Positions 17,594 through 62,066 of a DNA stretch of 64,000 nucleotides are shown here, in pieces. Both the position numbers and the translations under genes were made by a program. Position 1 is the stretch's first letter. Each line of letters opens with the position of its first letter. The notes under the pieces are model-generated. The model did not search any database, was not told the DNA's origin, and worked only from the letters and a program-made list of their open reading frames with translations. Origin of the DNA: Hyaloraphidium curvatum SAG 235-1 (Eukaryota > Fungi > Monoblepharomycota); assembly GCA_025558095.1 (NCBI GenBank), contig JAIVFI010000002.1:1054001-1118000 (forward strand), read 5' to 3'.

Positions 17594-17660
17594 GCCGCCT
17601 GTTTATTGGATGCGATGAAGTGCAATGAAACCATTCATTCTCGAGACAGATTACAACGCT

Positions 17661-19016: not shown

Positions 19017-19113
19017 GTCGCGTTTCGGAATGGGATGAATCGTCGGTATTGGCAAAGTCAACGGGTTCTTTGTGACTGCGCGTGATTCCTGCTGCTCCGA
19101 GCCATCGCGGAGC

Positions 19114-19290
19114 TATATATCCTTGTCTCCCGGGTTTTAGAGCGCGCTGTTCGGGAAGCGAGGCGGAGCGGGCTGTGCCAAGGGATTGGATTACCCCGGC
19201 GAGTGCTCGCCAGAACCGTCGCGAGAACTGCTCCGAAACGTGCAATGCTCCGCCGCCGCCACCTCCAAAACCCGCACGACGCGTATATAA
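19114..19290. promoter_or_regulatory. Divergent promoter with two TATA-like boxes
   Basis: TATATAT at 19114-19120 and TATATAA at 19284-19290, about 100-125 bp upstream of the genes A and B start codons in a GC-rich background. Confidence 0.55.
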
Positions 19291-19413
19291 TGGCGCCGGG
19301 TGCAGGGGGCCCCATCACCAGCGCCAACGGACACACAGAGCAACCCAGCTACTCTCTCCGATTCTCGCTCGACTCCAACTCCAACCTTCTCATACATACT
19401 TCACTCCGATAAA

Positions 19414-20403: not shown

Positions 20404-21028
20404 AGTGGCTCTCGAAATGGATAATTGCTTGAATGAGTCGATTGCCGTCCTTGATGCCCGGGGTCCATTTCCAATCATGTCTCCTGCAAATCACTCTGGT
20501 GGACGAAGCCGCCCCCAATCTTACCGCATCGTCCTCAATCTCGGGCTCCCGCCGTCCTCCAGATGGGCTTGCCCGAAATTCGGGTCCGCTCCGTCATTGA
20601 GGGACACCGATCTCTGGGGGTGGACGTCCGTCTTCATGAGGCAGACGACAGGCGGCCCGGGACTATGGCCGAGCCGGATAGGCGACCGCGAGCAGTTCCT
20701 GATGAGCTGGCTGATGCAAGCCTCGGAGTACATTTCTGGACCAACAGAGCTCCGTTCCCCATTTGCTCCGCCGAATCAAAGGTGCCTCTGCAGGTCCGAA
20801 AACCAATTGAATTCCCCCACGACACTGCCGTCACCGGGCGGCATTCCATCCGAGTCCGAATTTCATGAAGATGCGAAAAGTACAGGATCTCCGGGCATGG
20901 GATTCGCGCGTCATTGGGCCGTCAGAACTCCGAGCCCAGCCGGCTGTGCTGTGCGTGGCGAAGCAGAACCTTCCACCATCCCCGCCAGAACGCGATGCGC
21001 TCCAAATCTCCGACTTTACGCGGCGCCG

Positions 21029-21035
21029 TATATAT
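21029..21035 (+). promoter_or_regulatory. TATA-like box of gene C
   Basis: TATATAT about 115 bp upstream of ATG 21148. Confidence 0.45.
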
Positions 21036-21147
21036 GCGGTGCCTCTGCAGATGTCGGCGGCACCATCCTGCGACGACCTGAGCGGCACTCAGGCCACAGA
21101 GCGGACCTCCTTCTTCACCTCAATATCGAACCAACACCAACAACAAC

Positions 21148-22479: not shown

Positions 22480-22514
22480 ACTGCTTTGCATAAATGAAAA
22501 CTCAGTTTGCCATC

Positions 22515-30350: not shown

Positions 30351-30477
30351 GTTGTGTCATATCTACTAGTGGCCCTTGCAGGAGTGGACTCAAGGTCCTA
30401 TGGGGCCGGATGCTTCAGCTGGGGGACAGCTCATCGGCCAACAATGAATAGACTGATTCATTTATTTGAAAGCAGCT

Positions 30478-31809
30478 TCACCGAATGCACCGCCTGAACA
30501 GGTGCGCCGCCGGCATCTCGCGCTTGGCGATCGCCATCCGCACCCGATCCGCCTGCGCGCGCAGCGCCGCGGTGTCCTGCCCCGCCGCCTCGGCCCTCGC
30601 GATCGCGTCCTCGAGCTGGGCTTGGTACGCCTTGGCACCGGCCAGGTCCTCCTCGGCGCGCTCGCGGGCCGACATCCTCCCCATCCCGATCTGGTCCCGC
30701 TCCGGGTGCTCCACGGGCGGGTCCACGGCGATCGCGTTCTGCGCCGAGCCCCCGCCGGAAGCGGGCGGCGACCCGCCGAGGGGGCACGAGGCGCCGTCGG
30801 GGCTCCAGTAGGTCATGACGGCGTACCCGGCGTTGCCGCCGTAGCCCGAGGGCACGAGCATGGGGATCTGGTAGTCGCCCGTGCTGTACTTGATGCCTCC
30901 GAGCCCGGCGGCGGCGGGGGGGTTGATCGTGCCGGTGGGAACGAAGGCGTTGGCGCCGAGCTGGGGCTGCGGCGCCGGCAGGTTCGTGCTGAACAGCTGC
31001 CCGTTGGCCCCGGCCGATCCGCCGTTGCCGCCGCCGTACACGGGGTCGTAACCGGAGGGATCCGGGTTGTTGGTTGCCTGCCCCGTGCCCTGGCCGCCGC
31101 CGCCTCCGAAGCCCCCTCCGCAGCCCGCGGCGAGCTGGCCGCCCACGGAGCCGCCCGCGAGATTGTTGCCTCCGACGCCGCCCTGCACCTGCAAGCCGAG
31201 GTTGCGGGCGCCCGTGCCGCCCACGCCGGCCTTGCCGGGCATGGCGCCCTTGCCGGCGGCGCCCCATGCGAGGGGCCCGCTCGCCTCGCCGCCGCCGCCC
31301 CCGCGGTCGGCGTGCTGGTCGTTGGCGGTGCCGCCGCCGCCCCCCACGGAGCCGGCCCCGCCGCCTCCGCCCCCGCCGAGCGAGCATGGGTCCGAGTTGG
31401 GGGAGAAGAAGTTCGCCGGGTAGTACTCGGCCCCTCCGCCGCCGCCCCCGCCGACCGTGACGGTGACGACGTCTCCCGGCAGCGCGTAGAATGCCAGGGT
31501 GACGCGTCCGCCGTCGTTGCCCGTGGTGAGCGCCGCCGCCCCCCCGTCGCCGCCCCACGCATAGAATCGGTTGCCGCCGACCGTGACGGCCGTCGATCCG
31601 CCGCCGCCTCCCGCGCCGCCTCCGGCGCCCGAGCCGCCGCCGCCGCCGACGAGCGTGATGTTGAACGGCAGCGGCGCGGCCGAGGCGTCCAGCGTGGCCG
31701 AGAACTGCACGGGGATGTTGTTGACGCAGAGGAGCTGGGAGGCCGCGGCGGGCGAGGCCAAGAGAAGGGAGGACGCGGCGAGCGCGATGAGCGCGACGCG
31801 GCTGGGCAT
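30478..31809 (-). CDS. Secreted glycine-rich protein C' (copy of C)
   Basis: Translation identical to 21148-22479. Confidence 0.88.
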   Translation of the reverse strand: MPSRVALIALAASSLLLASPAAASQLLCVNNIPVQFSATLDASAAPLPFNITLVGGGGGSGAGGGAGGGGGSTAVTVGGNRFYAWGGDGGAAALTTGNDGGRVTLAFYALPGDVVTVTVGGGGGGGAEYYPANFFSPNSDPCSLGGGGGGGAGSVGGGGGTANDQHADRGGGGGEASGPLAWGAAGKGAMPGKAGVGGTGARNLGLQVQGGVGGNNLAGGSVGGQLAAGCGGGFGGGGGQGTGQATNNPDPSGYDPVYGGGNGGSAGANGQLFSTNLPAPQPQLGANAFVPTGTINPPAAAGLGGIKYSTGDYQIPMLVPSGYGGNAGYAVMTYWSPDGASCPLGGSPPASGGGSAQNAIAVDPPVEHPERDQIGMGRMSARERAEEDLAGAKAYQAQLEDAIARAEAAGQDTAALRAQADRVRMAIAKREMPAAHLFRRCIR

Positions 31810-32553
31810 GTTGTTGTTGGTGTTGGTTCGATATTGAGGTGAAGAAGGAGGTCCGCTCTGTGGCCTGAGTGCCGCTCAGGTCGTCGCAGGATGGTGCCGC
31901 CGACATCTGCAGAGGCACCGCATATATACGGCGCCGCGTAAAGTCGGAGATTTGGAGCGCATCGCGTTCTGGCGGGGATGGTGGAAGGTTCTGCTTCGCC
32001 ACGCACAGCACAGCCGGCTGGGCTCGGAGTTCTGACGGCCCAATGACGCGCGAATCCCATGCCCGGAGATCCTGTACTTTTCGCATCTTCATGAAATTCG
32101 GACTCGGATGGAATGCCGCCCGGTGACGGCAGTGTCGTGGGGGAATTCAATTGGTTTTCGGACCTGCAGAGGCACCTTTGATTCGGCGGAGCAAATGGGG
32201 AACGGAGCTCTGTTGGTCCAGAAATGTACTCCGAGGCTTGCATCAGCCAGCTCATCAGGAACTGCTCGCGGTCGCCTATCCGGCTCGGCCATAGTCCCGG
32301 GCCGCCTGTCGTCTGCCTCATGAAGACGGACGTCCACCCCCAGAGATCGGTGTCCCTCAATGACGGAGCGGACCCGAATTTCGGGCAAGCCCATCTGGAG
32401 GACGGCGGGAGCCCGAGATTGAGGACGATGCGGTAAGATTGGGGGCGGCTTCGTCCGCCAGAGTGATTTGCAGGAGACATGATTGGAAATGGACCCCGGG
32501 CATCAAGGACGGCAATCGACTCATTCAAGCAATTATCCATTTCGAGAGCCACT

Positions 32554-33543
32554 TTACAGCAGGCAGCTGACACCGTCCGGCGAGGCGTACTGGACGATGG
32601 CGTACCCGGCGTTCCCCCCGTAGCCGCCCTTCAGCGCGCCCTTGCCCGCATCGGCCGGCGCATCCAGCGAGCCCGTGGAGACGAAGCTCAGCGCCCCCTT
32701 GCCGCCGAGCAGCACCGAGGGGTAAAAGTACGACCCGCCGTCCGTGCCAAAGGACCCGCCGGGCATGCCCTGCTTGGCGCCCTTGGTGCCGCTGGGCGTG
32801 CCGCAACCGCCTCCCGAGCCGAAGCCCCCGCCCGAGCCGCCGTAGGCGTAGGCGAACGAGGCTTGCGAGTAGTTGCCGGTCGCGCCCTGCCCGCCCGTGC
32901 CCACGCCGGGTGCGCCGTAGCCGCCCTTCTCGAAGCCGCCGTTCGAGGCGTCGCCCGAGCCGCCGTTGCCGCCGTGGAACTCTCCGTTGCCGCCCTCCCC
33001 GCCGTTGCCCCCGTTCTTCCCGGTCGAGCCCCCGCCGCCACCGTATGCACCCGAGCCGCCGCCGCCGCCGGCATTGTCCTTGCTCCACCCGCCGCCCGCA
33101 CCGCCACCGCCTCCGACCTTGACGAAGAGGTACTGTCCCGCCGAGAGGGTGATTGTGCCCTTGACCACGGCGCCGTTGGCCCCGGGGTTGTCGCCCGACG
33201 CGCTCTTGCCCCCGGTCCCGCCGGCGGCGTAGCGCCGCGATCCCGACTTGCCGTCGGTGTCGGTCGGATCCGACGACACGGCGATGGCGGTCGACCCGCC
33301 GCCGCCTCCCGATCCGTGGCTGCCTCCGGCCCCGCCGCCGGCGCCGACGAGGGTGAAGGCGAGGGAGAGGTCCGCGTTGTAGGGGTTGGGCCGGGCGAGG
33401 TACGTGCGGATGTCCGTCGTGCAGGTCTTTGCCTGGCGGGCCGCGAGCGGCGCGGCCGCGGCGGTGCCGATGAGGGCGAGGCCGGCGAGGCCAAGCGCCA
33501 GGGCGCGGAGGGGGGACGCGTTGCGGCGCGTGTCGGTCGACAT
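32554..33543 (-). CDS. Secreted glycine-rich protein B' (copy of B)
   Basis: Matches B except NADFSL versus NADLSL. Confidence 0.85.
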   Translation of the reverse strand: MSTDTRRNASPLRALALGLAGLALIGTAAAAPLAARQAKTCTTDIRTYLARPNPYNADLSLAFTLVGAGGGAGGSHGSGGGGGSTAIAVSSDPTDTDGKSGSRRYAAGGTGGKSASGDNPGANGAVVKGTITLSAGQYLFVKVGGGGGAGGGWSKDNAGGGGGSGAYGGGGGSTGKNGGNGGEGGNGEFHGGNGGSGDASNGGFEKGGYGAPGVGTGGQGATGNYSQASFAYAYGGSGGGFGSGGGCGTPSGTKGAKQGMPGGSFGTDGGSYFYPSVLLGGKGALSFVSTGSLDAPADAGKGALKGGYGGNAGYAIVQYASPDGVSCLL

Positions 33544-33940
33544 TTTATCGGAGTGAAGTATGTATGAGAAGGTTGGAGTTGGAGTCGAGCGAGAATCGGA
33601 GAGAGTAGCTGGGTTGCTCTGTGTGTCCGTTGGCGCTGGTGATGGGGCCCCCTGCACCCGGCGCCATTATATACGCGTCGTGCGGGTTTTGGAGGTGGCG
33701 GCGGCGGAGCATTGCACGTTTCGGAGCAGTTCTCGCGACGGTTCTGGCGAGCACTCGCCGGGGTAATCCAATCCCTTGGCACAGCCCGCTCCGCCTCGCT
33801 TCCCGAACAGCGCGCTCTAAAACCCGGGAGACAAGGATATATAGCTCCGCGATGGCTCGGAGCAGCAGGAATCACGCGCAGTCACAAAGAACCCGTGGAC
33901 TTTGCCAATACCGACGATTCATCCCATTCCGAAACGCGAC

Positions 33941-35296
33941 ATGTCGCCAACCGCAACCAACTCCAACGTCTCCCACCGCCGCCGCTCCGTGGCCTCGATC
34001 GCCGCCGCCCTCGTGGCCGGCCTCGCCCTGGCAACCCCGGCAGCCGCCCAGCAACAGGGCGTCCTTTGCATCAACAACGTCGTGACCACATTCAACGTCG
34101 CGCTTCCATCGTCGGCCGCGCCGCTCCCGTTCAACGTCACCCTCGTCGGAGGCGGAGGCGGGTCGGGGACCAAGCGCGGAGGGGGCGGAGGAGGGGGCTC
34201 AACGGCCATCACGGTCGGCCAGAACCGGTTCTACGCGTGGGGCGGCGAGGGCGCCAACGCGATGCCGGACACCGTGGGCGGCGACGGCGGCCGCGTCACG
34301 CTCGCCTTCACCGCGCTGCCCGGGGACGACATCGTCGTCAAGGTCGGGGGCGGAGGCGGAGGGGCCTCGGCGCAAACGGACTACAGGCCGCCCGGGGCCA
34401 GCGGCGACGTCGGCGCGGGCGGAGGCGGCGGGGCCGGAGCCATTGGCGGCGGAGGCGGCAGCGACGCGAGCGCCTTCGGCCACGGCATCAGCGGGGGCGG
34501 CGAGGCCGACGGCCCCATGCAGGCCGGTGCAGCGGGCGACGGCGCGACCCCGGGCCAGCCGGACGTGGGCGGGAAGGGCGGCTCGCTCAACGAGCAGGGC
34601 GGGCTCCCCGGCAACAGCAACACGGGCGGCTCGCAATGGAACATGGCCGCTGGCGGCGGGGCCGGCTACGGCTCGGGCGGCGGCCAGGGCGGGGGCGACA
34701 CCATGGACAACCAGGGCTCGCCGGCGACCAGGTTCTATGGCGGCGCCGGAGGAAGCGATGCGGGCGACGGCGTGTTCGCGCAGGACGGCCTCGAATCCCC
34801 AGCTCAGCTCGGTGCTGCCTCGATGGCACCCACCTGGACCATCAACCCGCCGGCGGCCGCAGGGCAAGGTGCCCCCATGAACTCGAGGGGCTACAGCGTC
34901 CTCCCTTCGGGCTACGGCGGGAACGCAGGCTACGCCGTGATCACCTACTGGAGCCCCGACGGCTCCAGCTGCCCCTACGGCGGCTCGGTGGCCCCCGCGA
35001 GCGCCTCCCTCGCACAGCAGTCGGCCGTCGCGGTCGACCCGCCGGTCGCCAACCCAGAGGAGGACCAGATCAGGGCGGCGAGGAGGGCGGCGGCCTACCG
35101 CGCTCTGGGGGCCGCTCAGAAGCAGCTGGCCGCCGCGAAGTTCAGCAGGGCACAGGCTCGGACTGCCCTGCTCGAGGCGCAAGAGGCCGGTGCAAACCAT
35201 CCGGAGCTGAGGGCCAAAGTGCACGGGCTGGAGGTCGAGATCGCGGCGATCGAGGGCGAGATCGTGCCGAGGCTCTCCAAGGAGCTCGTGGCCTGA
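33941..35296 (+). CDS. Secreted glycine-rich protein A' (diverged copy of A)
   Basis: Matches A, with substitutions clustered near the N-terminus and in the C-terminal tail. Confidence 0.85.
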   Translation: MSPTATNSNVSHRRRSVASIAAALVAGLALATPAAAQQQGVLCINNVVTTFNVALPSSAAPLPFNVTLVGGGGGSGTKRGGGGGGGSTAITVGQNRFYAWGGEGANAMPDTVGGDGGRVTLAFTALPGDDIVVKVGGGGGGASAQTDYRPPGASGDVGAGGGGGAGAIGGGGGSDASAFGHGISGGGEADGPMQAGAAGDGATPGQPDVGGKGGSLNEQGGLPGNSNTGGSQWNMAAGGGAGYGSGGGQGGGDTMDNQGSPATRFYGGAGGSDAGDGVFAQDGLESPAQLGAASMAPTWTINPPAAAGQGAPMNSRGYSVLPSGYGGNAGYAVITYWSPDGSSCPYGGSVAPASASLAQQSAVAVDPPVANPEEDQIRAARRAAAYRALGAAQKQLAAAKFSRAQARTALLEAQEAGANHPELRAKVHGLEVEIAAIEGEIVPRLSKELVA

Positions 35297-35393
35297 AACT
35301 TTGTAGTCTGTGGCGAGAACACAGTTTTTTACTGCCTATCAATGAGATTCGAAAGTTACTGCATGACGCTACTCGATGCCGCCGATCCACCAA

Positions 35394-50010: not shown

Positions 50011-50334
50011 CGCTCCAAAGGGGATGCGCGGCCTCGGGAAGGTCGCCGGCAGAGGCAGAGGCCTTCGATAGCAGGGCCATGCCACGGCGATGCGGTCGTA
50101 GGCGCACGGGAGGGCGCCGGAGCCTCTCAAAGAAGTGTCGCATGGTGTGGGGCACCCGATTCATCACTTGGTTCGCTCTCGTGCTCGGAAAATGAAGTGC
50201 AGCAAGCTTCTATCTTTCGATGTGCAGATCGGAACATTCCAATGCAGGTAACACTACAGCCCTGCAGCCATGAACAAGGTTCAGTAAGCGTGTCTCGAGA
50301 CACATGCGTGGCCGTCCTCCCGACGGCATCGACT

Positions 50335-53300
50335 CTAGTTCGGTATTTCGATGAAGTCTTGCGACAGGAATGTTTGGCCCGAGGTGATCTGGATGTTCAG
50401 GTACGTGGTCCCGCTGGGCGGCACGGGCCCGTTAATGTACCCGTTCGGTTGCGCTGCCGAGGCCCGGTCAGGCTGCCGAAAAAGAGCGAACGCGCACCGA
50501 CGGAGACCCACTCTCGTAAAGATTCCAGGTGCCCGCAGGAACGGGATTGAACAAGAAAGTCCCCGTTTGAGGCTGCAAGGCAAGCGGGAGGAAGTCAGCG
50601 CGAGCGCACAGAGCTTCCGGGCAAGCGACCCACGTTGGTGAGCTGTGTAAAGCTCCGGAAAACCCCTGTCCAGTCGGTTCCATTTAACGTCATCAAAATC
50701 TGTCCAATTGGCGTGTCGATGACGTCCCCGTCGTACTGCTGATTCCCGTTGTCGTCCGAGTAGATGCGTCCGCCGATCGCCCCGGGCAAAGGGGTGGTCG
50801 AGGTCGTGCGCGTTTGCGACTTGGTGGTGGTCGCCGAACGCGTCGTCGAGGAGAGCGAGGTCTGCCGGGGATGGATATGGATGAGCGCTGTGGCGCAAGG
50901 GGGATCAAAGGCCAAGGACTCACCGATGTCTGCGACTTGGTCGTGCTGCTCCGCGTGAACGAGGTCGTGGAAGATGCCGAGAAGGTGGTCGTTCTGCTAA
51001 GACTCGACGTCGTGAAGGTGGTCGTTCTGCTAAGACTCGTCGTCGAAGTGCGCGTTTGCGACTTGGTGGCCGTCGAACTCGCGGTCGTCGTGCGCGACAG
51101 CGATGTCGTGCTCGTCAGCGACGTAGAACTCGTCCTCGTCAAAGTTCCCGTGCCAGTTGCCGTTCGGGAAGTGCTCCTCGTGAAAGAAGTGGTCGAGGAG
51201 CGCGTCTGTACGCAATGGTCAGTAAATGGGGCACCATGTCGCAAAGACGTGACCCACAAAGCTGGTCGTCGGAGTGCGAGTTTCCGAGACCGTCCTAGTG
51301 CTCGAAGTGCGAGTTTCCGTGACCGTCCTAGTGCTCGACGTGAGAGTTTGAGTGCCAGTGGTGGTCTGAGAAGTCTGCAGGCAAAACTGCGTGAGATGGC
51401 AGAGGCAGACGGCCGTCGCGCAACCAACCGTCCGCGTCCTCGAGGAGGTGGTAGGCGTGGCCGTCCTGGAAGTGCTGGTCCGGCTCGTGCTGCTCGTGCT
51501 GCTCGTCCGCGTCTGCGTCGTGAAGGAAGTGGAGGTGGTCTCGGTGGTCCGGGTCCACAGCACTTAAGGCCCGGTCAGTGCCCGGAAAAGCCAAGACAAA
51601 CAACCCTCAACCCACCGGTCTCGCCAAAGTCATTGTCCAGCTTCGAATCCCCGTTCAGCAGGACCACACCGAGAATCTCCTCCTGGGGGCCTAGCGGCGA
51701 ATTGCTGGCGCCCGCGGGCTGGCGCTGTAAGACGTCGTACGTGCCAGGACGCTGAACGGCAAGAAGAACTTAGAAACGGAGGAAGAATCAACAAGGAGAT
51801 CGCCGTACCAGGTTTGTGATGATCCAGGATCCGTCCGGCTTCGTAATCACGGTGCGGTTGACGAGTTGACCAAGGTCATTGATACCAACAACGTTGATGA
51901 CGCAGCCCGAAATGCCGGTTTCTGAAAAGGTTGGAAGGGGCTGTCAGCCAAGCAAAAGTACGTGGGCATGTGCAACTCACCGCTGTCATCGACGCCGTTC
52001 TCGTTCCAGTCCACGTAGACGCGACCGCCGATCTCTGCAGCCGGTGTGTTCGTGGAGGTCGAGGATGTCCGAGTCTCGCTCGTGGTGGTAGGAGTCTCGG
52101 TTTCGGTGGTCTGGAGGAAGGAGGAAGAAAGTGACGGAAGTTAGAGAGCAGGCCTAGAGGCGGACGAGTTGAGCTAACCGTTGTGGGCGTTTCACTCGTC
52201 GTGCGCGACGACGTGGTTTCGGTCGTCAAGGTCTCCGTCGTCAGCGACTCAGCCGTCACTGTCTCCGTCGTCAACGTCTCCGTGGTCACAGTCTCGCTCG
52301 TGCTGGTTTCCGTCGTGAGCGTCTCGGACGTCGAGCTCGGCGTTTCCGTAGTGAGCGTCTCGGACGTCGAGCTCGGCGTTTCCGTGGTAAGCGTCTCGGA
52401 CGTCGAGCTCGGCGTTTCCGTGGTAAGCGTCTCGGACGTCGAGCTCGGCGTCTCCGTAGTGAGCGTCTCGGACGTCGAGCTGGGCGTCTCCGTGGTAAGC
52501 GTCTCGGACGTCGAGCTCGGCGTCTCCGTAGTGAGCGTCTCGGACGTCGAGCTGGGCGTCTCCGTGGTGAGAGACTCAGACGTCGTGCTCGGTGTCGCCG
52601 ACTCGGAAGTCTGGAATCCGACGAGCATTAGAGCTGTCACTGGTTCGGTAGCAGGCAAAACAAACGAACCGTCGATGACGTGAAGGATTCGGACGTCGTG
52701 CTCGAAGTTGCGGTCTCGGTCGTCTGCGGGAACCAAAAACCAATCAGCAACCACCCGAAGACGTGCACCAAGACGACACAAACCTGCGTCTCCGTCGTGA
52801 GCGAAATCGTGAGCGAGGTCGAGGAGGTGAGCGACTCCGAAGTCGTGCTCGACGTCGCGGACTCCGAGGTCTGCGAGGAAGGCAGCCATGATCAGCACAA
52901 TTCTGGTGGCCAAACGCGAATGTCGCTGACCGTCGACGACGTGCTCGGCGTTTCCGTAGTGAGCGTCTCGGACGTCGAGCTCGGCGTCTCCGTGGTCAGC
53001 GTCTTGGACGTCGAGCTGGGCGTCTCCGTGGTGAGAGACTCAGACGTCGTGCTCGGTGTCGCCGACTCGGAAGTCTGGAATCCGACGAGCATTAGAGCTG
53101 TCACTGGGTTCGGTAGCAGGCAAAACAAACGAACCGTCGATGACGTGAAGGATTCGGACGTCGTGCTCGAAGTTGCGGTCTCGGTCGTCTGCGGGAACCA
53201 AAAACCAATCAGCAACCACCCGAAGACGTGCACCAAGACGACACAAACCTGCGTCTCCGTCGTGAGCGAAATCGTGAGCGAGGTCGAGGAGGTGAGCGAC

Positions 53301-56300
53301 TCCGAAGTCGTGCTCGACGTCGCGGACTCCGAGGTCTGCGAGGAAGGCAGCCATGATCAGCACAATTCTGGTGGCCAAACGCGAATGTCGCTGACCGTCG
53401 ACGACGTGCTCGGCGTTTCCGTAGTGAGCGTCTCGGACGTCGAGCTCGGCGTCTCCGTGGTCAGCGTCTTGGACGTCGAGCTGGGCGTCTCCGTGGTGAG
53501 AGACTCAGACGTCGTGCTCGGTGTCGCCGACTCGGAAGTCTGGAATCCGACGAGCATTAGAGCTGTCACTGGGTTCGGTAGCAGGCAAAACAAACGAACC
53601 GTCGATGACGTGAAGGACTCGGACGTCGTGCTCGAAGTTGCGGTCTCGGTCGTCTGCGGGAACCAAAACCAATCAGCACCCACCCGAAAACGAGCACCAA
53701 GACGACACTAACCTGCGTCTCCGTCGTGAGCGAAATGGTGAGCGAGGTTGACGAAGTGATCGACTCCGAAGTAGTGCTCGACGTCGCGGACTCCGAGGTC
53801 TACGAAGCAAAGTGACATATATCAGTACACACCAAGTGGCGAACGCGCCGCTCACTCACTGTAGTAAGCGTCTCCGTGGTAACGCTTGTGGAAGTCAGGC
53901 TGGACGTCGTGGAGGTCATCTGGATCTCGCCAAAGTCGTTGTCGAGCTTGGAATCGCCATTCAGAAGCACGACGCCGAGAATCTGCGTGCCGGGGCCGAG
54001 CGGCGAGTCCGTGAACCCGGCGGGCTGCACCTCGATCACGTCGTAGGTGCCAGGCCGCAAATTCGGGAACAGGTAGGTGCCGTCGGGGCCGGTGGTCGTC
54101 GTGAGGCTAACCGGGTTGCCGAGGTCATCCGTGCCGACCAGGTTGACCGTCACGCCTGGGATCGGGACCTCGCCATCGTCCACGCCGTTGAGGTTGGCAT
54201 CGACGTAGACGCGGCCACCAAGCTCCGCGGCCGGCGTGGGCGTGCTCGTCGCCGAGGTGAGGCTCGTGGTCGTCTCCGTGTGCTGGATCTCGCCAAAGTC
54301 GTTGTCGAGCTTGGAATCGCCGTTGACCAGCACGACGTTGAGGATCTGCGTGCCGGGGCCGAGGGGCGAGTCCGTGAAGCCCGCGGGCTGCACCTCGAAG
54401 ATGCTGTAGGTGCCAGGCGGCAGGTTCGGGAACAGGTAGGTGCCGTCGGGGCCCGTGGTCGTGGTGAGGCTGACCGGGTTGCCGAGATCGTCCGTGCCGA
54501 CCAGGTTGACCGTCACGCCGGGGATGCCAGTTTCTGGTGGAAGCAAGCAGTCAGGGAAAGATCCGCAATGCCAGTGCGCGCAACTCACCGCCGTCGTCGA
54601 CGCCGTTCAGGTTCGAGTCCACGTAGACGCGGCCTCCGAGCTCCGCGGCCGGCGTGGGCGTGCTCGTGCCGGAGGTAAGGCTCGAGGTCGTCTGCGTCAT
54701 CTGGATCTCGCCAAAGTCGTTGTCGAGCTTGGAATCGCCATTCAGAAGCACGACGCCGAGAATCTGCGTGCCGGGGCCGAGCGGCGAGTCCGTGAACCCG
54801 GCGGGCTGCACCTCGATCACGTCGTAGGTGCCAGGCCGCAAATTCGGGAACAGGTAGGTGCCGTCGGGGCCGGTGGTCGTCGTGAGGCTAACCGGGTTGC
54901 CGAGGTCATCCGTGCCGACCAGGTTGACCGTCACGCCTGGGATCGGGACCTCGCCATCGTCCACGCCGTTGAGGTTGGCATCGACGTAGACGCGGCCACC
55001 AAGCTCCGCGGCCGGCGTGGGCGTGCTCGTCGCCGAGGTGAGGCTCGTGGTCGTCTCCGTGTGCTGGATCTCGCCAAAGTCGTTGTCGAGCTTGGAATCG
55101 CCGTTGACCAGCACGACGTTGAGGATCTGCGTGCCGGGGCCGAGGGGCGAGTCCGTGAAGCCCGCGGGCTGCACCTCGAAGATGCTGTAGGTGCCAGGCG
55201 GCAGGTTCGGGAACAGGTAGGTGCCGTCGGGGCCCGTGGTCGTGGTGAGGCTGACCGGGTTGCCGAGATCGTCCGTGCCGACCAGGTTGACCGTCACGCC
55301 GGGGATGCCAGTTTCTGGTGGAAGCAAGCAGTCAGGGAAAGATCCGCAATGCCAGTGCGCGCAACTCACCGCCGTCGTCGACGCCGTTCAGGTTCGAGTC
55401 CACGTAGACGCGGCCTCCGAGCTCCGCGGCCGGCGTGGGCGTGCTCGTGCCGGAGGTAAGGCTCGAGGTCGTCTGCGTCATCTGGATCTCGCCAAAGTCG
55501 TTGTCGAGCTTGGAATCGCCATTCAGAAGCACGACGCCGAGAATCTGCGTGCCGGGGCCGAGCGGCGAGTCCGTGAACCCGGCGGGCTGCACCTCGATCA
55601 CGTCGTAGGTGCCAGGCCGCAAATTCGGGAACAGGTAGGTGCCGTCGGGGCCGGTGGTCGTCGTGAGGCTAACCGGGTTGCCGAGGTCATCCGTGCCGAC
55701 CAGGTTGACCGTCACGCCTGGGATCGGGACCTCGCCATCGTCCACGCCGTTGAGGTTGGCATCGACGTAGACGCGGCCACCAAGCTCCGCGGCCGGCGTG
55801 GGCGTGCTCGTCGCCGAGGTGAGGCTCGTGGTCGTCTCCGTGTGCTGGATCTCGCCAAAGTCGTTGTCGAGCTTGGAATCGCCGTTGACCAGCACGACGT
55901 TGAGGATCTGCGTGCCGGGGCCGAGGGGCGAGTCCGTGAAGCCCGCGGGCTGCACCTCGAAGATGCTGTAGGTGCCAGGCGGCAGGTTCGGGAACAGGTA
56001 GGTGCCGTCGGGGCCCGTGGTCGTGGTGAGGCTGACCGGGTTGCCGAGATCGTCCGTGCCGACCAGGTTGACCGTCACGCCGGGGATGCCAGTTTCTGGT
56101 GGAAGCAAGCAGTCAGGGAAAGATCCGCAATGCCAGTGCGCGCAACTCACCGCCGTCGTCGACGCCGTTCAGGTTCGAGTCCACGTAGACGCGGCCTCCG
56201 AGCTCCGCGGCCGGCGTGGGCGTGCTCGTGCCGGAGGTAAGGCTCGAGGTCGTCTGCGTCATCTGGATCTCGCCAAAGTCGTTGTCGAGCTTGGAATCGC

Positions 56301-59300
56301 CATTCAGAAGCACGACGCCGAGAATCTGCGTGCCGGGGCCGAGCGGCGAGTCCGTGAACCCGGCGGGCTGCACCTCGATCACGTCGTAGGTGCCAGGCCG
56401 CAAATTCGGGAACAGGTAGGTGCCGTCGGGGCCGGTGGTCGTCGTGAGGCTAACCGGGTTGCCGAGGTCATCCGTGCCGACCAGGTTGACCGTCACGCCT
56501 GGGATCGGGACCTCGCCATCGTCCACGCCGTTGAGGTTGGCATCGACGTAGACGCGGCCACCAAGCTCCGCGGCCGGCGTGGGCGTGCTCGTCGCCGAGG
56601 TGAGGCTCGTGGTCGTCTCCGTGTGCTGGATCTCGCCAAAGTCGTTGTCGAGCTTGGAATCGCCGTTGACCAGCACGACGTTGAGGATCTGCGTGCCGGG
56701 GCCGAGGGGCGAGTCCGTGAAGCCCGCGGGCTGCACCTCGAAGATGCTGTAGGTGCCAGGCGGCAGGTTCGGGAACAGGTAGGTGCCGTCGGGGCCCGTG
56801 GTCGTGGTGAGGCTGACCGGGTTGCCGAGATCGTCCGTGCCGACCAGGTTGACCGTCACGCCGGGGATGCCAGTTTCTGGTGGAAGCAAGCAGTCAGGGA
56901 AAGATCCGCAATGCCAGTGCGCGCAACTCACCGCCGTCGTCGACGCCGTTCAGGTTCGAGTCCACGTAGACGCGGCCTCCGAGCTCCGCGGCCGGCGTGG
57001 GCGTGCTCGTGCCGGAGGTAAGGCTCGAGGTCGTCTGCGTCATCTGGATCTCGCCAAAGTCGTTGTCGAGCTTGGAATCGCCATTCAGAAGCACGACGCC
57101 GAGAATCTGCGTGCCGGGGCCGAGCGGCGAGTCCGTGAACCCGGCGGGCTGCACCTCGATCACGTCGTAGGTGCCAGGCCGCAAATTCGGGAACAGGTAG
57201 GTGCCGTCGGGGCCGGTGGTCGTCGTGAGGCTAACCGGGTTGCCGAGGTCATCCGTGCCGACCAGGTTGACCGTCACGCCTGGGATCGGGACCTCGCCAT
57301 CGTCCACGCCGTTGAGGTTGGCATCGACGTAGACGCGGCCACCAAGCTCCGCGGCCGGCGTGGGCGTGCTCGTCGCCGAGGTGAGGCTCGTGGTCGTCTC
57401 CGTGTGCTGGATCTCGCCAAAGTCGTTGTCGAGCTTGGAATCGCCGTTGACCAGCACGACGTTGAGGATCTGCGTGCCGGGGCCGAGGGGCGAGTCCGTG
57501 AAGCCCGCGGGCTGCACCTCGAAGATGCTGTAGGTGCCAGGCGGCAGGTTCGGGAACAGGTAGGTGCCGTCGGGGCCCGTGGTCGTGGTGAGGCTGACCG
57601 GGTTGCCGAGATCGTCCGTGCCGACCAGGTTGACCGTCACGCCGGGGATGCCAGTTTCTGGTGGAAGCAAGCAGTCAGGGAAAGATCCGCAATGCCAGTG
57701 CGCGCAACTCACCGCCGTCGTCGACGCCGTTCAGGTTCGAGTCCACGTAGACGCGGCCTCCGAGCTCCGCGGCCGGCGTGGGCGTGCTCGTGCCGGAGGT
57801 AAGGCTCGAGGTCGTCTGCGTCATCTGGATCTCGCCAAAGTCGTTGTCGAGCTTGGAATCGCCATTCAGAAGCACGACGCCGAGAATCTGCGTGCCGGGG
57901 CCGAGCGGCGAGTCCGTGAACCCGGCGGGCTGCACCTCGATCACGTCGTAGGTGCCAGGCCGCAAATTCGGGAACAGGTAGGTGCCGTCGGGGCCGGTGG
58001 TCGTCGTGAGGCTAACCGGGTTGCCGAGGTCATCCGTGCCGACCAGGTTGACCGTCACGCCTGGGATCGGGACCTCGCCATCGTCCACGCCGTTGAGGTT
58101 GGCATCGACGTAGACGCGGCCACCAAGCTCCGCGGCCGGCGTGGGCGTGCTCGTCGCCGAGGTGAGGCTCGTGGTCGTCTCCGTGTGCTGGATCTCGCCA
58201 AAGTCGTTGTCGAGCTTGGAATCGCCGTTGACCAGCACGACGTTGAGGATCTGCGTGCCGGGGCCGAGGGGCGAGTCCGTGAAGCCCGCGGGCTGCACCT
58301 CGAAGATGCTGTAGGTGCCAGGCGGCAGGTTCGGGAACAGGTAGGTGCCGTCGGGGCCCGTGGTCGTGGTGAGGCTGACCGGGTTGCCGAGATCGTCCGT
58401 GCCGACCAGGTTGACCGTCACGCCGGGGATGGCAGTTTCTGATGGAACCACCAGTCAGAAGTAGGTCAGCGCAACCAGTGCGAGCAACGCACCGCCGTCG
58501 TCCACGCCGTTGAGGTTGGCATCCACGTACACGCGGCCGCCAAGTTCGGCCCGCACGGTAAACGTCGAGGAGGTCCTTGCCCGCGTCGAAGTGCTCGGCG
58601 ACAGCGTGCTGGTCGTCATCTGGATCTCGCCGAAATCGTTGTCGAGCTTCGAGTCGCCGTTGACTAGCACGACGTTCAGGATCTCGGTCTGCGGCCCCAG
58701 GGGCGAGTTCGTGAACCCGGCGGGCTGGATCTCGAACACGCTGTAGGTGCCCGGGCGCAGGTTGGGGAACAGGTAGGTGCCGTCGGGCCCCGTGGTCGTC
58801 GTGAGGCTGACCGGGTTGCCGAGATCGTCCGTGCCGACCAGGTTGACCGTCACGCCGGGGATGGCAGTTTCTGATGGAACCAGCAGTCAGAAGTAGGTCA
58901 GCGCAACCAGTGCGAGCAACGCACCGCCGTCGTCCATGCCGTTGAGGTTGGCATCCACGTATACGCGGCCGCCAAGTTCGGCCCGCACGGTAAACGTCGA
59001 GGAGGTCCTTGCCCGTGTCGAGGTGCTCGGCGAGAGCGTGCTGGTCGTCATCTGGATCTCGCCGAAATCGTTGTCGAGCTTCGAGTCGCCGTTGACTAGC
59101 ACGACGTTCAGGATCTCGGTCTGCGGCCCCAGGGGCGAGTTCGTGAACCCGGCGGGCTGGATCTCGAACACGCTGTAGGTGCCCGGGCGCAGGTTGGGGA
59201 ACAGGTAGGTGCCGTCGGGCCCCGTGGTCGTCGTGAGGCTGACCGGGTTGCCGAGATCGTCCGTGCCGACCAGGTTGACCGTCACGCCGGGGATGGCAGT

Positions 59301-62066
59301 TTCTGATGGAACCAGCAGTCAGAAGTAGGTCAGCGCAACCAGTGCGAGCAACGCACCGCCGTCGTCCATGCCGTTGAGGTTGGCATCCACGTATACGCGG
59401 CCGCCAAGTTCGGCCCGCACGGTAAACGTCGAGGAGGTCCTTGCCCGTGTCGAGGTGCTCGGCGAGAGCGTGCTGGTCGTCATCTGGATCTCGCCGAAAT
59501 CGTTGTCGAGCTTCGAGTCGCCGTTGACTAGCACGACGTTCAGGATCTCGGTCTGCGGCCCCAGGGGCGAGTTCGTGAACCCGGCGGGCTGGATCTCGAA
59601 CACGCTGTAGGTGCCCGGGCGCAGGTTGGGGAACAGGTAGGTGCCGTCGGGCCCCGTGGTCGTCGTGAGGCTGACCGGGTTGCCGAGATCGTCCGTGCCG
59701 ACCAGGTTGACCGTCACGCCGGGGATGGCAGTTTCTGATGGAACCAGCAGTCAGAAGTAGGTCAGCGCAACCAGTGCGAGCAACGCACCGCCGTCGTCCA
59801 TGCCGTTGAGGTTGGCATCCACGTATACGCGGCCGCCAAGTTCGGCCCGCACGGTAAACGTCGAGGAGGTCCTTGCCCGTGTCGAGGTGCTCGGCGAGAG
59901 CGTACTGGTCGTCATTTGGATCTCGCCGATTATCTGGATCTCGCCGAAATCGTTGTCAAGCTTCGAGTCACCGGCCTTCAGCGCGATGTTGAGGATCTCG
60001 GTCTGCGGTCCCAGCGGAGAGTTTTGGTACACGGCGGGCTGGATCTCGAAGACGCTGTACGTCCCGGGCGGCTGCGGGCGTGGTCCGGGTCAGCGAGGCT
60101 CAAGGGAGGCAAGGCCCGGCTCGGTGCTCACAAGGTTCGTGAACAGGTAGGTACCATCCGGCCCGGTCGTAGTCGTGCGATTGATGAGGAATCCGGCGCT
60201 ATCCGTGCCGACGAGGTTGATCGTGACGCCGGTGATTGCGATTTCTGTAGCAGGAATGGGGAGCCTTTAGCCGCGTTCAAAACCCGCAAAGGACCACGGC
60301 CTACCGTTGTCATCGACTCCATTCCTGTTTGCGTCGATGTAGACGCGTCCTCCGAGCTGTGCGGGGGCCGGGGGCTGCGCGGACGGTCAGCGAAAAGGCG
60401 GCGGTCCTTCTGAGACGGGCCAAACTCACCGCCGGGGGAGGCGGCGCGATGCAGCTGGTCATGGCTAGCGTGGCCACGCTGGAGGTCCGCACCCCATTCG
60501 CATCGATGACCGTGTATGAGAACGAATCGGTGCCCGAGAATCCCGTGGAAGGCGTGTAGATGAAGGAGCCGTTGGCGTTGATCTGCACCGGGAAGCCCTG
60601 CGCCGTGACGACGTTGCGCTCGACGATGGTGAGGAGCGCGCCGACCGAGTCTTTGAGCAGGCCTTGAGAAGCCGGGATGAACATGGGGATGCAGCTGTCG
60701 CCCGTGAACGTGGGGCTCGTGGCCACCTGCGGCAGGCAGGTCACGGAGGCGCCGCTGACGGTCGAGGTGACCCTGCGCGAAAGCGGGATGTTAGGCGATT
60801 CGGATGTCCAGTGCGCGGAGCAGCTACCCACGAGACGGTTCCGGCAGCCGTGAGGGTGGTTGTGAGGGTGGGCCCGACGTCCGACTCGGGATCGTGGGCA
60901 AACACGGTGCGGACAGTTGGGGGCCGCGTGCTCGTCTGGGTCACGATGGTCGTCGAGAAGACGGCCGAAAAGGTGCCGTTTCCGGTGGAGTCCTGCCAGA
61001 CGCAGTCGACCGACGCGACGTGGGTGGGCACCTGGCATCCACCGGTGCCTGCGAGCTGCACCACCCGGGTCGTGGTGCGCGTCGTCGTGGTGCGCCTCGT
61101 CGACAAGACCAGCTTTGTGCTGGTTCGGCGGTAGGTCCGGGTAGTCCACCGGGTCCTCCAGCACTGCGACTTCCACGTGGTGCACATGACCGCGCAGTTG
61201 CCCCAGTTGGTGCGCCGCTCAAGATCCAACAGATGGTCGGCATCCTCCTCCTCGTCGATTTCCGTAGCGTCCGGTGTGTCAAAGATTTCCTCAGGCTCCA
61301 GATCGCGGCGGACCAGCTGGCGGGGGCCGGGCTTGGACGCCCCCATGTCGATGGCCACCCCCGGCAGCTCATAGATCTGGTCCTCGACTTCGAGCGCGCC
61401 GGCCGAGAGCATGCCGGCGGCCGGGGCACCGATGCGGCGCCTGGCCCGCGCGGCGTCGGTCAGGTTGGTCTGCGGGCAGCTGACGACCACGCTGGCGGTC
61501 ACGAAGCGGGTCGTCGTGGGGGTGAGCGTGGTCGAGGCGGTCGAGCCGGGCAGATCCGTGTTGGCGGTGAGCGTCCGGGTCTTTGTGCTCCCGGACTGCC
61601 ACACGGTTGACGTGCTTTGCACCACGTAGGTGGCCTGGGAGGCCAAGCCGGTGGGGTCCATGCCGATGGTGGTCTTGATGCCCGTGATGATGGCCTGGGT
61701 CACCTTGGTGACCTGCAGCCGCACCACGGTCTTTGTCGTCGTGCGCTTGACGCGCTTTGTCGCCGTGACGAATTTGCCGGCCGTGCGGGTCTTCGTGCTG
61801 GTGCGCTGGCACGACGTGACCGAGCAGGTGTTGTGCCGCCGGAACAGGTTGCCGACACCGCGGCGGTACAGCTGCCTGCACTCCGGCGGCTTGTCGAACG
61901 TGCGGCGGTCGAGCGCGTGCGGCTCCTCGGCGGCGGCGGGGCCCGCGATCGCGAGGGCGACGAGCACGGCCGCGAGGAGGGGGACCAGCGAAAGGAGCCG
62001 CCGGAGCGCGCCGCGCCCCGGCCGGGCCCGCGCAGACCCGCGATCCGCACGGTCTGCCGCGGACAT
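50335..62066 (-). CDS. Giant secreted adhesin-like protein: signal sequence, Thr-rich region, Big_9/cadherin-like Ig domain, about 18 SdrD B-like domains, Ser/Thr stalk
   Basis: Hydrophobic leader LLSLVPLLAAVLVALAIAGPAAA; ANGSFIYTPSTGFSGTDSFSYTVID; repeats LGGRVYVDANLNGVDDGE..IPGVTVNL...TTTGPDGTYLFPNL.PGTY....QPAGF...DNDFGE. Many in-phase GT-AG introns. Confidence 0.85.
52310..52570 (-). repeat. 36-bp coding tandem repeat (ETLTTETPSSTS) about x7
   Basis: Visible in DNA and translation. Confidence 0.9.
52530..53800 (-). repeat. 465-bp exon/intron tandem unit, about 2.7 copies
   Basis: ORFs recur at a 465-bp offset (52892 and 53357). Confidence 0.85.
53905..58440 (-). repeat. 781-bp tandem unit (two SdrD-B domains plus 55-nt intron), about 6 copies
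   Basis: Identical ORFs every 781 bp (54551, 55332, 56113, 56894, 57675). Confidence 0.97.
58440..59925 (-). repeat. 432-bp tandem unit (one SdrD-B domain plus 54-nt intron), about 3.4 copies
   Basis: ORFs recur at 58455, 58887, 59319 and 59751. Confidence 0.95.

What the first reader, a model, noticed from the sequence alone, without database searches (positions are those of the whole stretch)
50335..62066. Eukaryotic giant protein built from about 18 bacterial SdrD-B domains plus a Big_9-like domain
Seen: by my count 1+3+12+1+1 domains, each with a DxNxNGxxD Ca-loop, in a gene with many spliceosomal introns. It also has a mucin-like Ser/Thr stalk and no evident C-terminal TM or GPI signal (ends QDFIEIPN*). 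Known: SdrD/SdrG B domains are Ca-stabilised, mechanically very strong stalk modules of bacterial surface adhesins, and Big_9 repeats are also typically bacterial. Inference: horizontally acquired adhesin modules domesticated into a long fungal tether, holdfast or matrix fibre.
Basis: partly seen in the sequence, partly recalled or inferred. Interest (0 to 1): 0.8.

Follow-up and report, generated by a model that had tools for sequence, protein, structure and literature searches.

The report
Fungal giant SdrD-type surface fibre protein
An early-diverging freshwater fungus (Hyaloraphidium curvatum) expresses one intron-rich gene for a roughly 3,300-residue secreted protein built of 18 calcium-loop "stalk" domains of a kind otherwise typical of bacterial adhesins. 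It belongs to a gene family long resident in that lineage, and social amoebae already offer a published precedent for such proteins.

Summary
Window 62066..50335 (minus strand) is one gene of Hyaloraphidium curvatum (GenBank KAI9033426.1, "hypothetical protein"). My model has 32 exons, 31 GT-AG introns of 52-68 nt, and 3,314 aa. Its order is: N-terminal hydrophobic signal or anchor, orphan Cys/Thr/basic head, one Big_9 domain, 16 tandem SdrD_B domains, a 429-aa Ser/Thr/Glu stalk, domain 17, a 207-aa Ser/Thr/Arg stalk, and a divergent C-terminal SdrD-like cap. There is no TM or GPI tail. Spliced RNA contigs confirm 15 junctions in the 3' 6 kb and correct the GenBank 3' end.

- The domain type is overwhelmingly prokaryotic, and the closest named relatives are bacterial (30-50% identity).
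- This is not a fresh or unique transfer. The genome holds at least 6 such loci (at least 55 domains) with host-like composition and shuffled heads and caps.
- A second, unidentified eukaryote carries domain-by-domain orthologues.
- The domain tree cannot name a donor, nor reject one common eukaryotic origin that includes Dictyostelid colossins.
- Colossin A is a published precedent: a giant eukaryotic protein of bacterial Cna_B-type repeats.

The scan had already noted SdrD-B genes on other pieces of this genome, and this same stretch. Function as a Ca-stiffened, glycosylated surface or matrix fibre is inferred, not shown.

The parts
50335..62066 (-). Whole gene: 32 exons, 31 GT-AG introns (52-68 nt), CDS 9,945 nt, 3,314 aa, about 344 kDa before glycosylation, pI 4.1
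   Evidence: Splice-aware model. Agrees with GenBank KAI9033426.1 over aa 1-3001 apart from two splice choices. 15 junctions are confirmed by RNA contigs. Mass and pI.
61929..62066 (-). Start codon, Arg-rich N-region (aa 1-20) and the only hydrophobic segment (aa 21-46), followed by AAA/EEP: a signal peptide or a type II signal anchor
   Evidence: Kyte-Doolittle maximum of 2.63 at aa 24-42, with no other window above 1.6 in the protein. The C7 paralogue has an equivalent segment. No signal-peptide predictor was available.
60832..61928 (-). Orphan head (aa 47-412): Thr/Arg/Lys-rich with 8 Cys invariant between paralogues, an acidic stretch, and conserved RRR and LERR-T dibasic sites (possible kexin sites)
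   Evidence: No Pfam family. Atlas best score 0.76. Only one paralogue in the genome, on C7, at 46% identity. The AF2 model was unusable, pLDDT 33.
60372..60726 (-). Big_9 / cadherin-like Ig domain (aa 428-527), the only one in the genome above threshold
   Evidence: PF17963 5.1e-11 and PF17892 2.7e-8. Own-genome search finds one match. Big_9-like domains co-occur with SdrD_B arrays in bacterial hits P0233 and P0054.
59940..60356 (-). SdrD_B domain 1 (aa 533-631), split by two introns: one after the Ca loop, one before the PGTY strand
58626..59840 (-). SdrD_B domains 2-4: 432-bp exon+intron units, with 0-6 differences between units
   Evidence: TRF reports period 432, 4.0 copies, 97%. Unit comparison. 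Domains.
53926..58544 (-). SdrD_B domains 5-16: six two-domain units of 781 bp (a 726-nt exon plus a 55-nt intron inside every second Ca loop). Five units are identical, with 0-1 differences.
   Evidence: Pfam SdrD_B 1e-30. AF2 pLDDT 81 with SdrD 10ps as best PDB match. phmmer to SdrD B1-B2 1.9e-12.
52033..53925 (-). Stalk 1 (aa 2473-2901): Ser/Thr/Glu-rich, mucin-like, encoded by 87+54+144-nt exon triplets in 465-bp repeats plus 36-bp repeats
   Evidence: TRF. Composition T 41%, S 27%, E 13%. RNA joints 53799|53860, 53335|53396, 53188|53713 and the back-joint 53539>53135 fix the small exons.
51620..52032 (-). SdrD_B domain 17 (aa 2902-3000), split by two introns and followed by a conserved VLWT motif
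   Evidence: RNA joints 51921|51981, 51751|51809, 51562|51616. A counterpart with the same VLWT continuation occurs in the second eukaryote.
50778..51619 (-). Stalk 2 (aa 3001-3207): Ser/Thr/Arg-rich, net charge +21
   Evidence: RNA joints 51374|51429, 51205|51258, 50861|50924. Missing from the GenBank model, which leaves the frame here.
50338..50777 (-). C-terminal cap (aa 3208-3314): divergent SdrD-like domain 18 with a variant Ca loop, ending DFIEIPN. Conserved in three H. curvatum genes (C2, C34, C4) and in the second eukaryote.
   Evidence: Pairs with the other species' cap in the tree at 99/92*. RNA joints 50572|50634 and 50453|50512, and an RNA contig that runs 360 nt past 50300.

Best explanation
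This is one expressed nuclear gene of the fungus Hyaloraphidium curvatum. It encodes a giant secreted, modular, acidic glycoprotein of about 3,314 aa.

Order of parts: an N-terminal signal (or signal-anchor) segment; a Cys-stabilised basic head with no known relatives; one Big_9 Ig-like domain; a rod of 16 tandem SdrD_B beta-sandwich domains, each with an EF-hand-like Ca loop; a long Ser/Thr/Glu stalk that is probably O-glycosylated; one more SdrD_B domain; a Ser/Thr/Arg stalk; and a conserved SdrD-like C-terminal cap.

Likely mechanism (inferred). After entering the secretory pathway the protein forms a Ca2+-stiffened fibre some 0.1-0.2 micrometres long in the cell wall or surface layer. One end is held in the wall or matrix. 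The cap is shared by three paralogues and is the best candidate for a common attachment module. The other end, the variable head, engages a ligand or the wall.

Place in the genome. The gene belongs to a family of at least 6 loci whose heads, stalks and caps have been shuffled. The domain type most probably came from bacteria, but long ago. The family has introns and host composition, has orthologues in a second eukaryote, and has since grown by very recent tandem duplication of exon+intron units.
For: Shown:
- Gene structure and open frame.
- Splicing and expression: 15 GT-AG joints and a 1,874-nt spliced contig reaching the 3' UTR in run X1. A contig at least 99% identical is present in a polyA freshwater metatranscriptome, X2.
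- Identity with KAI9033426.1 of H. curvatum.
- SdrD_B and Big_9 membership.
- 17 canonical Ca loops plus 1 variant.
- A single N-terminal hydrophobic segment and no C-terminal one.
- Family of at least 6 loci. The head is shared only with C7. The cap is shared with C34 and C4.
- Orthologues in a second eukaryote.
- Bacterial nearest relatives at 30-50% identity.
- Host-like GC3.
- Five identical 781-bp units.

From established knowledge: S. aureus SdrD B repeats bind Ca2+ and act as a rigid stalk. Ser/Thr-rich tracts of fungal wall proteins are O-mannosylated spacers.
Against: - No experiment or localisation exists; function is inferred from architecture alone.
- Signal peptide versus membrane anchor is undecided. 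The h-region is about 20 residues, long for a cleaved signal.
- No known fungal wall-anchoring signal is present (no GPI tail, no PIR repeats found), so how, or whether, it is retained at the surface is unknown.
- Which end is proximal is a guess. In paralogue C4 the N-terminal head looks chitin-binding, which could mean that heads, not caps, hold the wall.
Two 5' splice choices differ from GenBank.
- The copy number of the identical units rests on one assembly.
- Bacterial origin rests on taxonomic distribution, not on a resolved tree.
Confidence: 0.7

Rival explanations
1. Freely secreted matrix or sheath protein. The fibre is not anchored to the cell but forms part of an extracellular mucilage or matrix, as proposed for Dictyostelium colossin A in the slug.
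For: No GPI, TM or other C-terminal anchor. Conserved dibasic sites after the hydrophobic N-terminus could release it. Colossin A is described as a structural slug protein made of Cna_B repeats (PMC3188802). RNA contigs carry high word depth (depth is a poor measure of expression).
Against: The conserved cap and swapped heads fit a two-ended tether better than bulk matrix. Nothing shows that H. curvatum has a sheath. No localisation data either way.
Confidence: 0.25
2. Ancient eukaryotic family. SdrD_B-type arrays were present early in eukaryotes, or spread between eukaryotes, and were lost in most lineages. H. curvatum, its relative, dictyostelid colossins and thraustochytrid proteins would then share one eukaryotic origin rather than separate bacterial transfers.
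For: In the careful tree, one split (97/83) places 20 of 22 eukaryotic domains on one side with only 3 bacterial rows. The AU test does not reject one clade of all eukaryotic rows (p 0.70). Thraustochytrium has many PF17210 proteins (PMC8917795).
Against: The three bacterial rows on that side interleave. P0056 and P0102 are sisters of colossin, and P0148 lies inside the H. curvatum group; P0056 and P0148 sit on clearly bacterial contigs, while the short P0102 contig carries no informative neighbours. Colossin is only 35% identical, against up to 50% for actinomycete proteins. No other fungus appeared in any search. Composition bias was flagged for the colossin rows. Massive loss would be needed.
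Confidence: 0.12
3. Recent transfer of a whole bacterial adhesin gene into this locus, or bacterial contamination of the assembly.
For: The domain type and the Big_9+SdrD_B combination are typical of bacteria.
Against: 31 spliceosomal introns with fungal-type donor, branch and acceptor sites, several inside domains. Spliced polyA RNA. GC3 equal to neighbours. The best bacterial identity is only about 50%. Paralogues lie on 5 other contigs. An orthologue exists in another eukaryote. The contig is 1.3 Mb.
Confidence: 0.02

Closest known systems
Staphylococcus aureus SdrD (and SdrC/E, UafA): MSCRAMM adhesins with B repeats
   Same: Same domain family and fold: PF17210 at 1e-30, phmmer 1.9e-12 to SdrD B1-B2, and best Foldseek match 10ps. 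Same Ca-loop motif at the start of each domain. Tandem array used as a stalk. Same overall order of head, B repeats, low-complexity Ser-rich region, C-terminal end.
   Different: Eukaryotic gene with 31 introns. The head is an orphan, not an N2-N3 IgG-like A region. The low-complexity part is Ser/Thr/Glu and Ser/Thr/Arg, not Ser-Asp dipeptides. There is no LPXTG or sortase signal; a conserved SdrD-like cap domain ends the protein. It has 18 domains rather than 2-5.
Dictyostelid colossins (colossin A-D), e.g. Cavenderia fasciculata colossin A, XP_004357925.1
   Same: Giant eukaryotic proteins made of tens to hundreds of bacterial-type Cna_B/SdrD_B repeats. Colossin A is listed as a candidate bacterial HGT and called a structural slug protein (PMC3188802). 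Colossin A is hit at 35% identity over 52 stretches.
   Different: Different supergroup (Amoebozoa versus Fungi). The domains match only positions 1-78 of the H. curvatum domain model. In both trees colossin's nearest rows are the bacterial P0056 and P0102, not H. curvatum. No shared head, stalk or cap. A common origin is not excluded (AU p 0.70).
Bacterial 'SdrD B-like domain-containing' giant repeat proteins (Actinokineospora, Crossiella, Gemmataceae, Isosphaeraceae, Chloroflexi; often TIGR01451/DUF11)
   Same: Closest non-self sequences: 30-50% identity, arrays of 10-40 domains, and some with Big_9 domains as well.
   Different: No introns, bacterial gene neighbourhoods, bacterial sorting modules, and no Ser/Thr mucin stalks or the H. 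curvatum head and cap.
Fungal cell-wall adhesins (Als, Flo, Epa type)
   Same: The logic of a secreted N-terminal binding head on a long Ser/Thr-rich, presumably O-glycosylated stalk. Rapid change of repeat number by tandem duplication.
   Different: No GPI-anchor signal. The stalk is mostly folded Ca-loop beta-sandwich domains of a family not otherwise reported from fungi in the papers I could search. No PA14, Als Ig or other known fungal head domain.
H. curvatum paralogues (C7 = KAI DFJ74DRAFT_489667; C4 = KAI9031487.1; C34, C15, C44)
   Same: C7 shares the head (46% identity), the linker wording and the stalk exon type. C4 and C34 share the cap. One C4 domain scores 148.9 bits with the C2 domain model.
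   Different: C7's 12-domain array is one intronless 1,542-aa frame. C4 has hevein-like, chitin-binding-type heads. Only this gene has a Big_9 domain, and it has the largest domain count.

Membership tests
SdrD_B domain (Pfam PF17210) | Profile score above the curated gathering threshold | tested here: met
   106.6 bits against a 29.7 cut-off for a two-domain exon. In the own-genome scan the 16 array domains score 40-62 bits. Domains 1, 17 and 18 are split by introns and were recognised with my own HMM and through the intronless orthologue in L024, which does hit PF17210.
SdrD_B domain (Pfam PF17210) | EF-hand-like Ca loop D-x-N-x-N-G-x-x-D at the domain start | tested here: met
   17 exact matches plus one variant. 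It aligns to the corresponding loop of S. aureus SdrD B1/B2.
SdrD_B domain (Pfam PF17210) | CnaB/prealbumin-like beta-sandwich fold as in solved SdrD B domains | tested here: met
   AF2 model pLDDT 81, with domains above 90. Best Foldseek hit is SdrD A2-A3-B1-B2, entry 10ps, E 1.4e-8, followed by UafA and CnaB-type pilins.
SdrD_B domain (Pfam PF17210) | Ca2+ binding and Ca-dependent mechanical or thermal stability | not testable with these tools
   Needs ITC, DSF or AFM on recombinant domains.
Big_9 (Pfam PF17963) | Profile score above the gathering threshold | tested here: met
   43.7 bits against a 23.6 cut-off, covering profile positions 27-87 of 89. 46.5 bits in the own-genome scan.
MSCRAMM / Sdr protein family (whole protein) | N-terminal A region with IgG-like N2-N3 ligand-binding domains | tested here: not met
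   No Pfam family in aa 1-411. No Atlas relative.
MSCRAMM / Sdr protein family (whole protein) | Ser-Asp dipeptide repeat region | tested here: not met
   The stalks are Ser/Thr/Glu and Ser/Thr/Arg.
MSCRAMM / Sdr protein family (whole protein) | C-terminal LPXTG sortase signal with hydrophobic tail | tested here: not met
   Ends ...DFIEIPN. Kyte-Doolittle 0.07 over the last 19 residues.
Colossin-like eukaryotic CnaB-repeat giants | Eukaryotic, intron-bearing gene encoding a long array of bacterial-type CnaB/SdrD_B domains | tested here: met
   Precedent in PMC3188802.
Colossin-like eukaryotic CnaB-repeat giants | Common descent with dictyostelid colossins | tested here: inconclusive
   35% identity. 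Colossin groups with the bacterial rows P0056 and P0102, but AU does not reject a joint eukaryotic clade (p 0.70).
GPI-anchored fungal adhesins | C-terminal GPI attachment signal | tested here: not met
   No C-terminal hydrophobic segment.
GPI-anchored fungal adhesins | Cleavable N-terminal signal peptide | tested here: inconclusive
   There is a hydrophobic segment at aa 21-46 after an Arg-rich N-region. Its length would also fit a signal anchor. No predictor was available.
Bacterium-to-fungus horizontal transfer | Nearest relatives bacterial and absent from other fungi; nested in a bacterial clade | tested here: inconclusive
   The nearest named relatives are bacterial and no other named fungus was found. 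However, a second eukaryote has orthologues, the searches list only top hits, and the tree is unresolved.

The most novel reading that the evidence does not exclude
A single old transfer of a bacterial fibrillar-adhesin stalk module into the Hyaloraphidium lineage seeded a fungal family of surface fibres. These fibres independently re-created the MSCRAMM layout: swappable N-terminal heads, Ca-stiffened B-repeat rod, glycosylated low-complexity spacer. Instead of a sortase or GPI signal, they use a new, conserved SdrD-derived C-terminal cap as a wall-attachment (or tip) module. That would be a fungal surface-anchoring mode not described before.
Probability: 0.3. Interest if true: 0.65.

Novelty: new variant of a known kind. 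Interest (0 to 1): 0.5.

Why it matters
If the reading holds, an early-diverging fungus builds its surface fibres from a bacterial-type, calcium-dependent stalk domain rather than from the usual fungal Ser/Thr repeats alone. It would be a second eukaryotic case beside the Dictyostelium colossins, and the first I could find for Fungi.

- It gives a natural test of whether SdrD_B mechanics (Ca-dependent rigidity) carry over to a eukaryotic secretory and glycosylation setting.
- The conserved cap and the lack of a GPI signal point to an unstudied way of holding or tipping wall proteins.
- The five identical exon+intron units show repeat arrays growing together with their introns.
- Practically, the GenBank model of this gene has a wrong 3' end.

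The concept itself, a eukaryotic giant built from bacterial CnaB-type repeats, is already published, which limits the surprise.

Tried and rejected
- AF2 on the N-terminal head with the only available two-sequence alignment gave pLDDT 33, so it was unusable and no fold search was run on it.
- The Atlas feature search of the head gave a best score of 0.76, at chance level.
- Pfam on the small exons of domains 1, 17 and 18 found nothing because introns split the domains. I relied on my own HMM and on the intronless orthologue.
- The first gene model, with a heavy intron penalty, skipped small exons. It was replaced after inspection and RNA joints.
- The quick free tree was poorly optimised, since constrained trees scored higher. 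Its topology was not used beyond the strongly supported pairs.
- No bacterial donor can be named.
- Paper searches for PF17210, SdrD or Cna_B in fungi or chytrids, and for the SRR accession of the second eukaryote, gave nothing useful.
- The identity of that organism could not be established.
- The search for related loci in bacterial genomes depends on exact peptide words and returned only 6 loci at 32-39% identity.
- Recent HGT and contamination were rejected (see rival explanations).
- The joined spliced protein was built and analysed only inside scripts. It was not sent to any search or fold tool; all searches were exon by exon or by reference, so no whole-protein search was done.
Full report
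WHAT IS THERE

The window is GC-rich (60-72%). It is part of contig C2 of a 31.9-Mb, 55-contig genome. The finding lies on the minus strand. Open frames there are broken every few hundred bases by short inserts with GTGAGT...CTGAC...CAG signatures.

A small splice-aware dynamic programme, then inspection, then RNA evidence gave a model of 32 exons and 31 GT-AG introns of 52-68 nt. The CDS is 9,945 nt, from the ATG at 62066 to the stop at 50335, and encodes 3,314 aa. The protein would be about 344 kDa with pI 4.1.

The joined protein was built and analysed only in scripts. All database and fold searches were made exon by exon or by reference, so no whole-protein search was run.

EXPRESSION AND ONE-GENE STATUS

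One public run (X1) holds 60% of the sampled words of 50335-60334. Laid on 50300-56299, its contigs skip exactly 15 GT-AG introns. These include every intron of the 3' end and the small 54-nt and 87-nt exons of the stalk.

One 1,874-nt spliced contig runs from 52337 through the stop and 360 nt beyond 50300. A polyA freshwater metatranscriptome (X2) holds a 280-nt contig at 99% identity or more.

GenBank already models the locus as one protein: KAI9033426.1, DFJ74DRAFT_727665, 3,064 aa, "hypothetical protein", Hyaloraphidium curvatum. It equals my model for aa 1-3001 apart from two splice choices. It then leaves the frame after domain 17 and lacks the second stalk and the last domain. The RNA joints support my 3' end.

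ANATOMY

- **N-terminus.** aa 1-20 are Arg-rich. aa 21-46 form the only hydrophobic segment (Kyte-Doolittle 2.6). There is none at the C-terminus, so no TM or GPI tail.
- **Head.** aa 47-412 form a Thr/Arg/Lys-rich head with no Pfam family and no Atlas relative. Its only relative in the genome is the N-terminus of a paralogue on C7, at 46% identity, with 8 invariant Cys and conserved RRR and LERR-T sites.
- **Big_9.** aa 428-527 are a Big_9 domain, the only one in the genome above threshold.
- **SdrD_B domains.** Then follow 18 domains in the pattern 1+3+12+1+1. Seventeen have an exact D-x-N-x-N-G-x-x-D loop; the last has a variant.
- **Recent amplification.** Domains 5-16 are six 781-bp units, each a two-domain exon plus a 55-nt intron inside every second Ca loop. 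Five of them are identical. Domains 2-4 are 432-bp units with 0-6 differences. This is very recent amplification or homogenisation of exon+intron units; the copy number rests on one assembly.
- **Stalks.** Two low-complexity stalks (aa 2473-2901, Ser/Thr/Glu; aa 3001-3207, Ser/Thr/Arg) flank domain 17.

DOMAIN IDENTITY

- Pfam SdrD_B scores 1e-30.
- phmmer against solved structures finds S. aureus SdrD B1-B2 at 1.9e-12, with the Ca loop and the DG-Y-F-NL-GxY strand aligned.
- An AF2 model of a two-domain exon (pLDDT 81) has SdrD 10ps as its best PDB match, followed by UafA and CnaB-type pilins.
- The whole protein is not an MSCRAMM: it has no A region, no Ser-Asp repeats and no LPXTG.

FAMILY IN THE GENOME

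PF17210 hits lie on C2, C4, C7, C15, C34, C44 and C54. Five fetched loci add at least 40 domains.

- C7 (DFJ74DRAFT_489667) has the same head, a 12-domain array in one intronless 1,542-aa frame, and the same stalk exon wording.
- C4 (KAI9031487.1) has a hevein-like Cys motif and a domain almost identical to those here.
- The C-terminal cap occurs only in C2, C34 and C4.

Heads, arrays and caps have therefore been recombined among paralogues. GC3 of this gene (0.875) equals that of neighbouring genes (0.87-0.92).

RELATIVES ELSEWHERE

An exhaustive HMMER search of 1.84 billion cluster representatives gave 15,039 hits at E of 0.001 or better. After the two H. curvatum proteins, the best were long repeat proteins at 35-50% identity.

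All those with names are bacterial (Actinokineospora, Crossiella, Gemmataceae and others), except colossin A of the dictyostelid Cavenderia fasciculata at 35%. Three word-based searches in three length classes found only bacteria and H. curvatum among named proteins. The Atlas neighbours are prokaryotic, and bacterial genome loci reach 32-39%.

One unnamed hit, P0316, is different.
- It lies on a 20.5-kb Logan contig (SRR23967301, GC 56%).
- Its neighbours are a kexin-like protease with EGF domains, a RINGv protein, and a carboxyltransferase 86% identical to H. curvatum's best exon.
- It is collinear with the C4 and C34 genes at 50-58% identity.
- It has a counterpart of domain 17, with the same VLWT continuation.
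- The ORF that follows it on the contig, probably the same gene's last exon, ends in the same cap as this gene.
- In the trees, three H. curvatum domains pair one-to-one with its domains at 99*, 99* and 99/92*.

The multi-domain genes therefore predate the split of two eukaryotic species. I could not identify the second species.

ORIGIN

The roughly 100-column domain tree is weak. In the careful tree, one split (97/83) puts 20 of 22 eukaryotic domains (H. curvatum, its relative, colossin) with three bacterial rows, against 58 bacterial rows plus one fungal pair. Two of those three rows sit on clearly bacterial contigs and all three interleave with the eukaryotic ones; the third contig is too short to tell.

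AU tests reject neither a single clade of H. curvatum plus its relative (p 0.92) nor one that also includes colossin (p 0.70). The bacterial sample was biased to top hits.

My reading is as follows. The domain type is most probably of bacterial origin, because it is vast in prokaryotes and patchy in eukaryotes. One acquisition in this lineage is compatible with the data. It is old. Neither the donor nor independence from colossins or thraustochytrid proteins (PMC8917795) is established.

COMPARISON WITH WHAT IS KNOWN

[quoted passage not shown] The family is expanded in other dictyostelids (PMC4334915). The general idea is therefore not new.

I found no paper on such domains in fungi. New here are the fungal host, the MSCRAMM-like order of head, B repeats and Ser/Thr spacer, the conserved SdrD-derived cap in place of a GPI or LPXTG signal, and the intron-bearing repeat units.

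MECHANISM (INFERRED)

The protein enters the secretory pathway through the N-terminal hydrophobic segment. It may be processed by kexin at the conserved dibasic sites; H. curvatum has kexin-like genes. The two stalks are probably O-glycosylated. The 18 acidic domains (net charge of the 16-domain array -179) would load Ca2+ into a stiff rod.

The result would be a fibre in the wall or surface layer. One end would be fixed, with the shared cap as my favoured candidate. The variable head would bind a ligand or the wall. A free matrix role is the main rival. "Holdfast" is unlikely for a planktonic unicell (my knowledge of the organism).

VERDICT

This is a new variant of a known kind, of moderate interest. 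The scan had already flagged SdrD-B genes on other pieces of this genome, and this very stretch. I checked the family and the organism name independently.

Noticed in passing
window 17638-22480 and 30477-35319: A 4,843-nt inverted repeat, 99% complementary, with 7,996 nt between the arms. It carries three pairs of ORFs with coding-like GC3 (0.87-0.92). This is a recent inverted segmental duplication around a central segment.
   Followed up: partly
window 50335-51620: The GenBank model KAI9033426.1 leaves the reading frame after domain 17 and ends early. It misses the Ser/Thr/Arg stalk and the conserved C-terminal cap. Six RNA junctions support the longer 3,314-aa model.
   Followed up: yes
L024 1-13735 (Logan contig of SRR23967301): An unidentified eukaryote (GC 56%) carries an orthologue of the H. 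curvatum C4/C34 SdrD_B genes with the same C-terminal cap. Its neighbours are a kexin-like protease fused to EGF domains, a RINGv protein and a carboxyltransferase.
   Followed up: partly
L017 2626-7254 (G000 C7:17625-22253): The paralogue with the same N-terminal head encodes its 12 SdrD_B domains in one intronless 1,542-aa frame. The C2 gene has an intron in every second domain, and the C15 array has one ORF per 420-bp unit. Intron content of the repeat units therefore differs sharply between paralogues.
   Followed up: partly
L018 4103-6295 (G000 C4): The C4 paralogue has a hevein-like cysteine motif (chitin-binding type) upstream of SdrD_B domains. One of those domains is nearly identical to the domains of the C2 gene (148.9 bits with the C2 domain model), which suggests recent exchange of domains between loci.
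   Followed up: partly
window 54092-54454: A polyA RNA-seq run of a freshwater metagenome (X2) contains a 280-nt contig at least 99% identical to the repeat. The organism, or a very close relative, therefore expresses this gene in nature.
   Followed up: no
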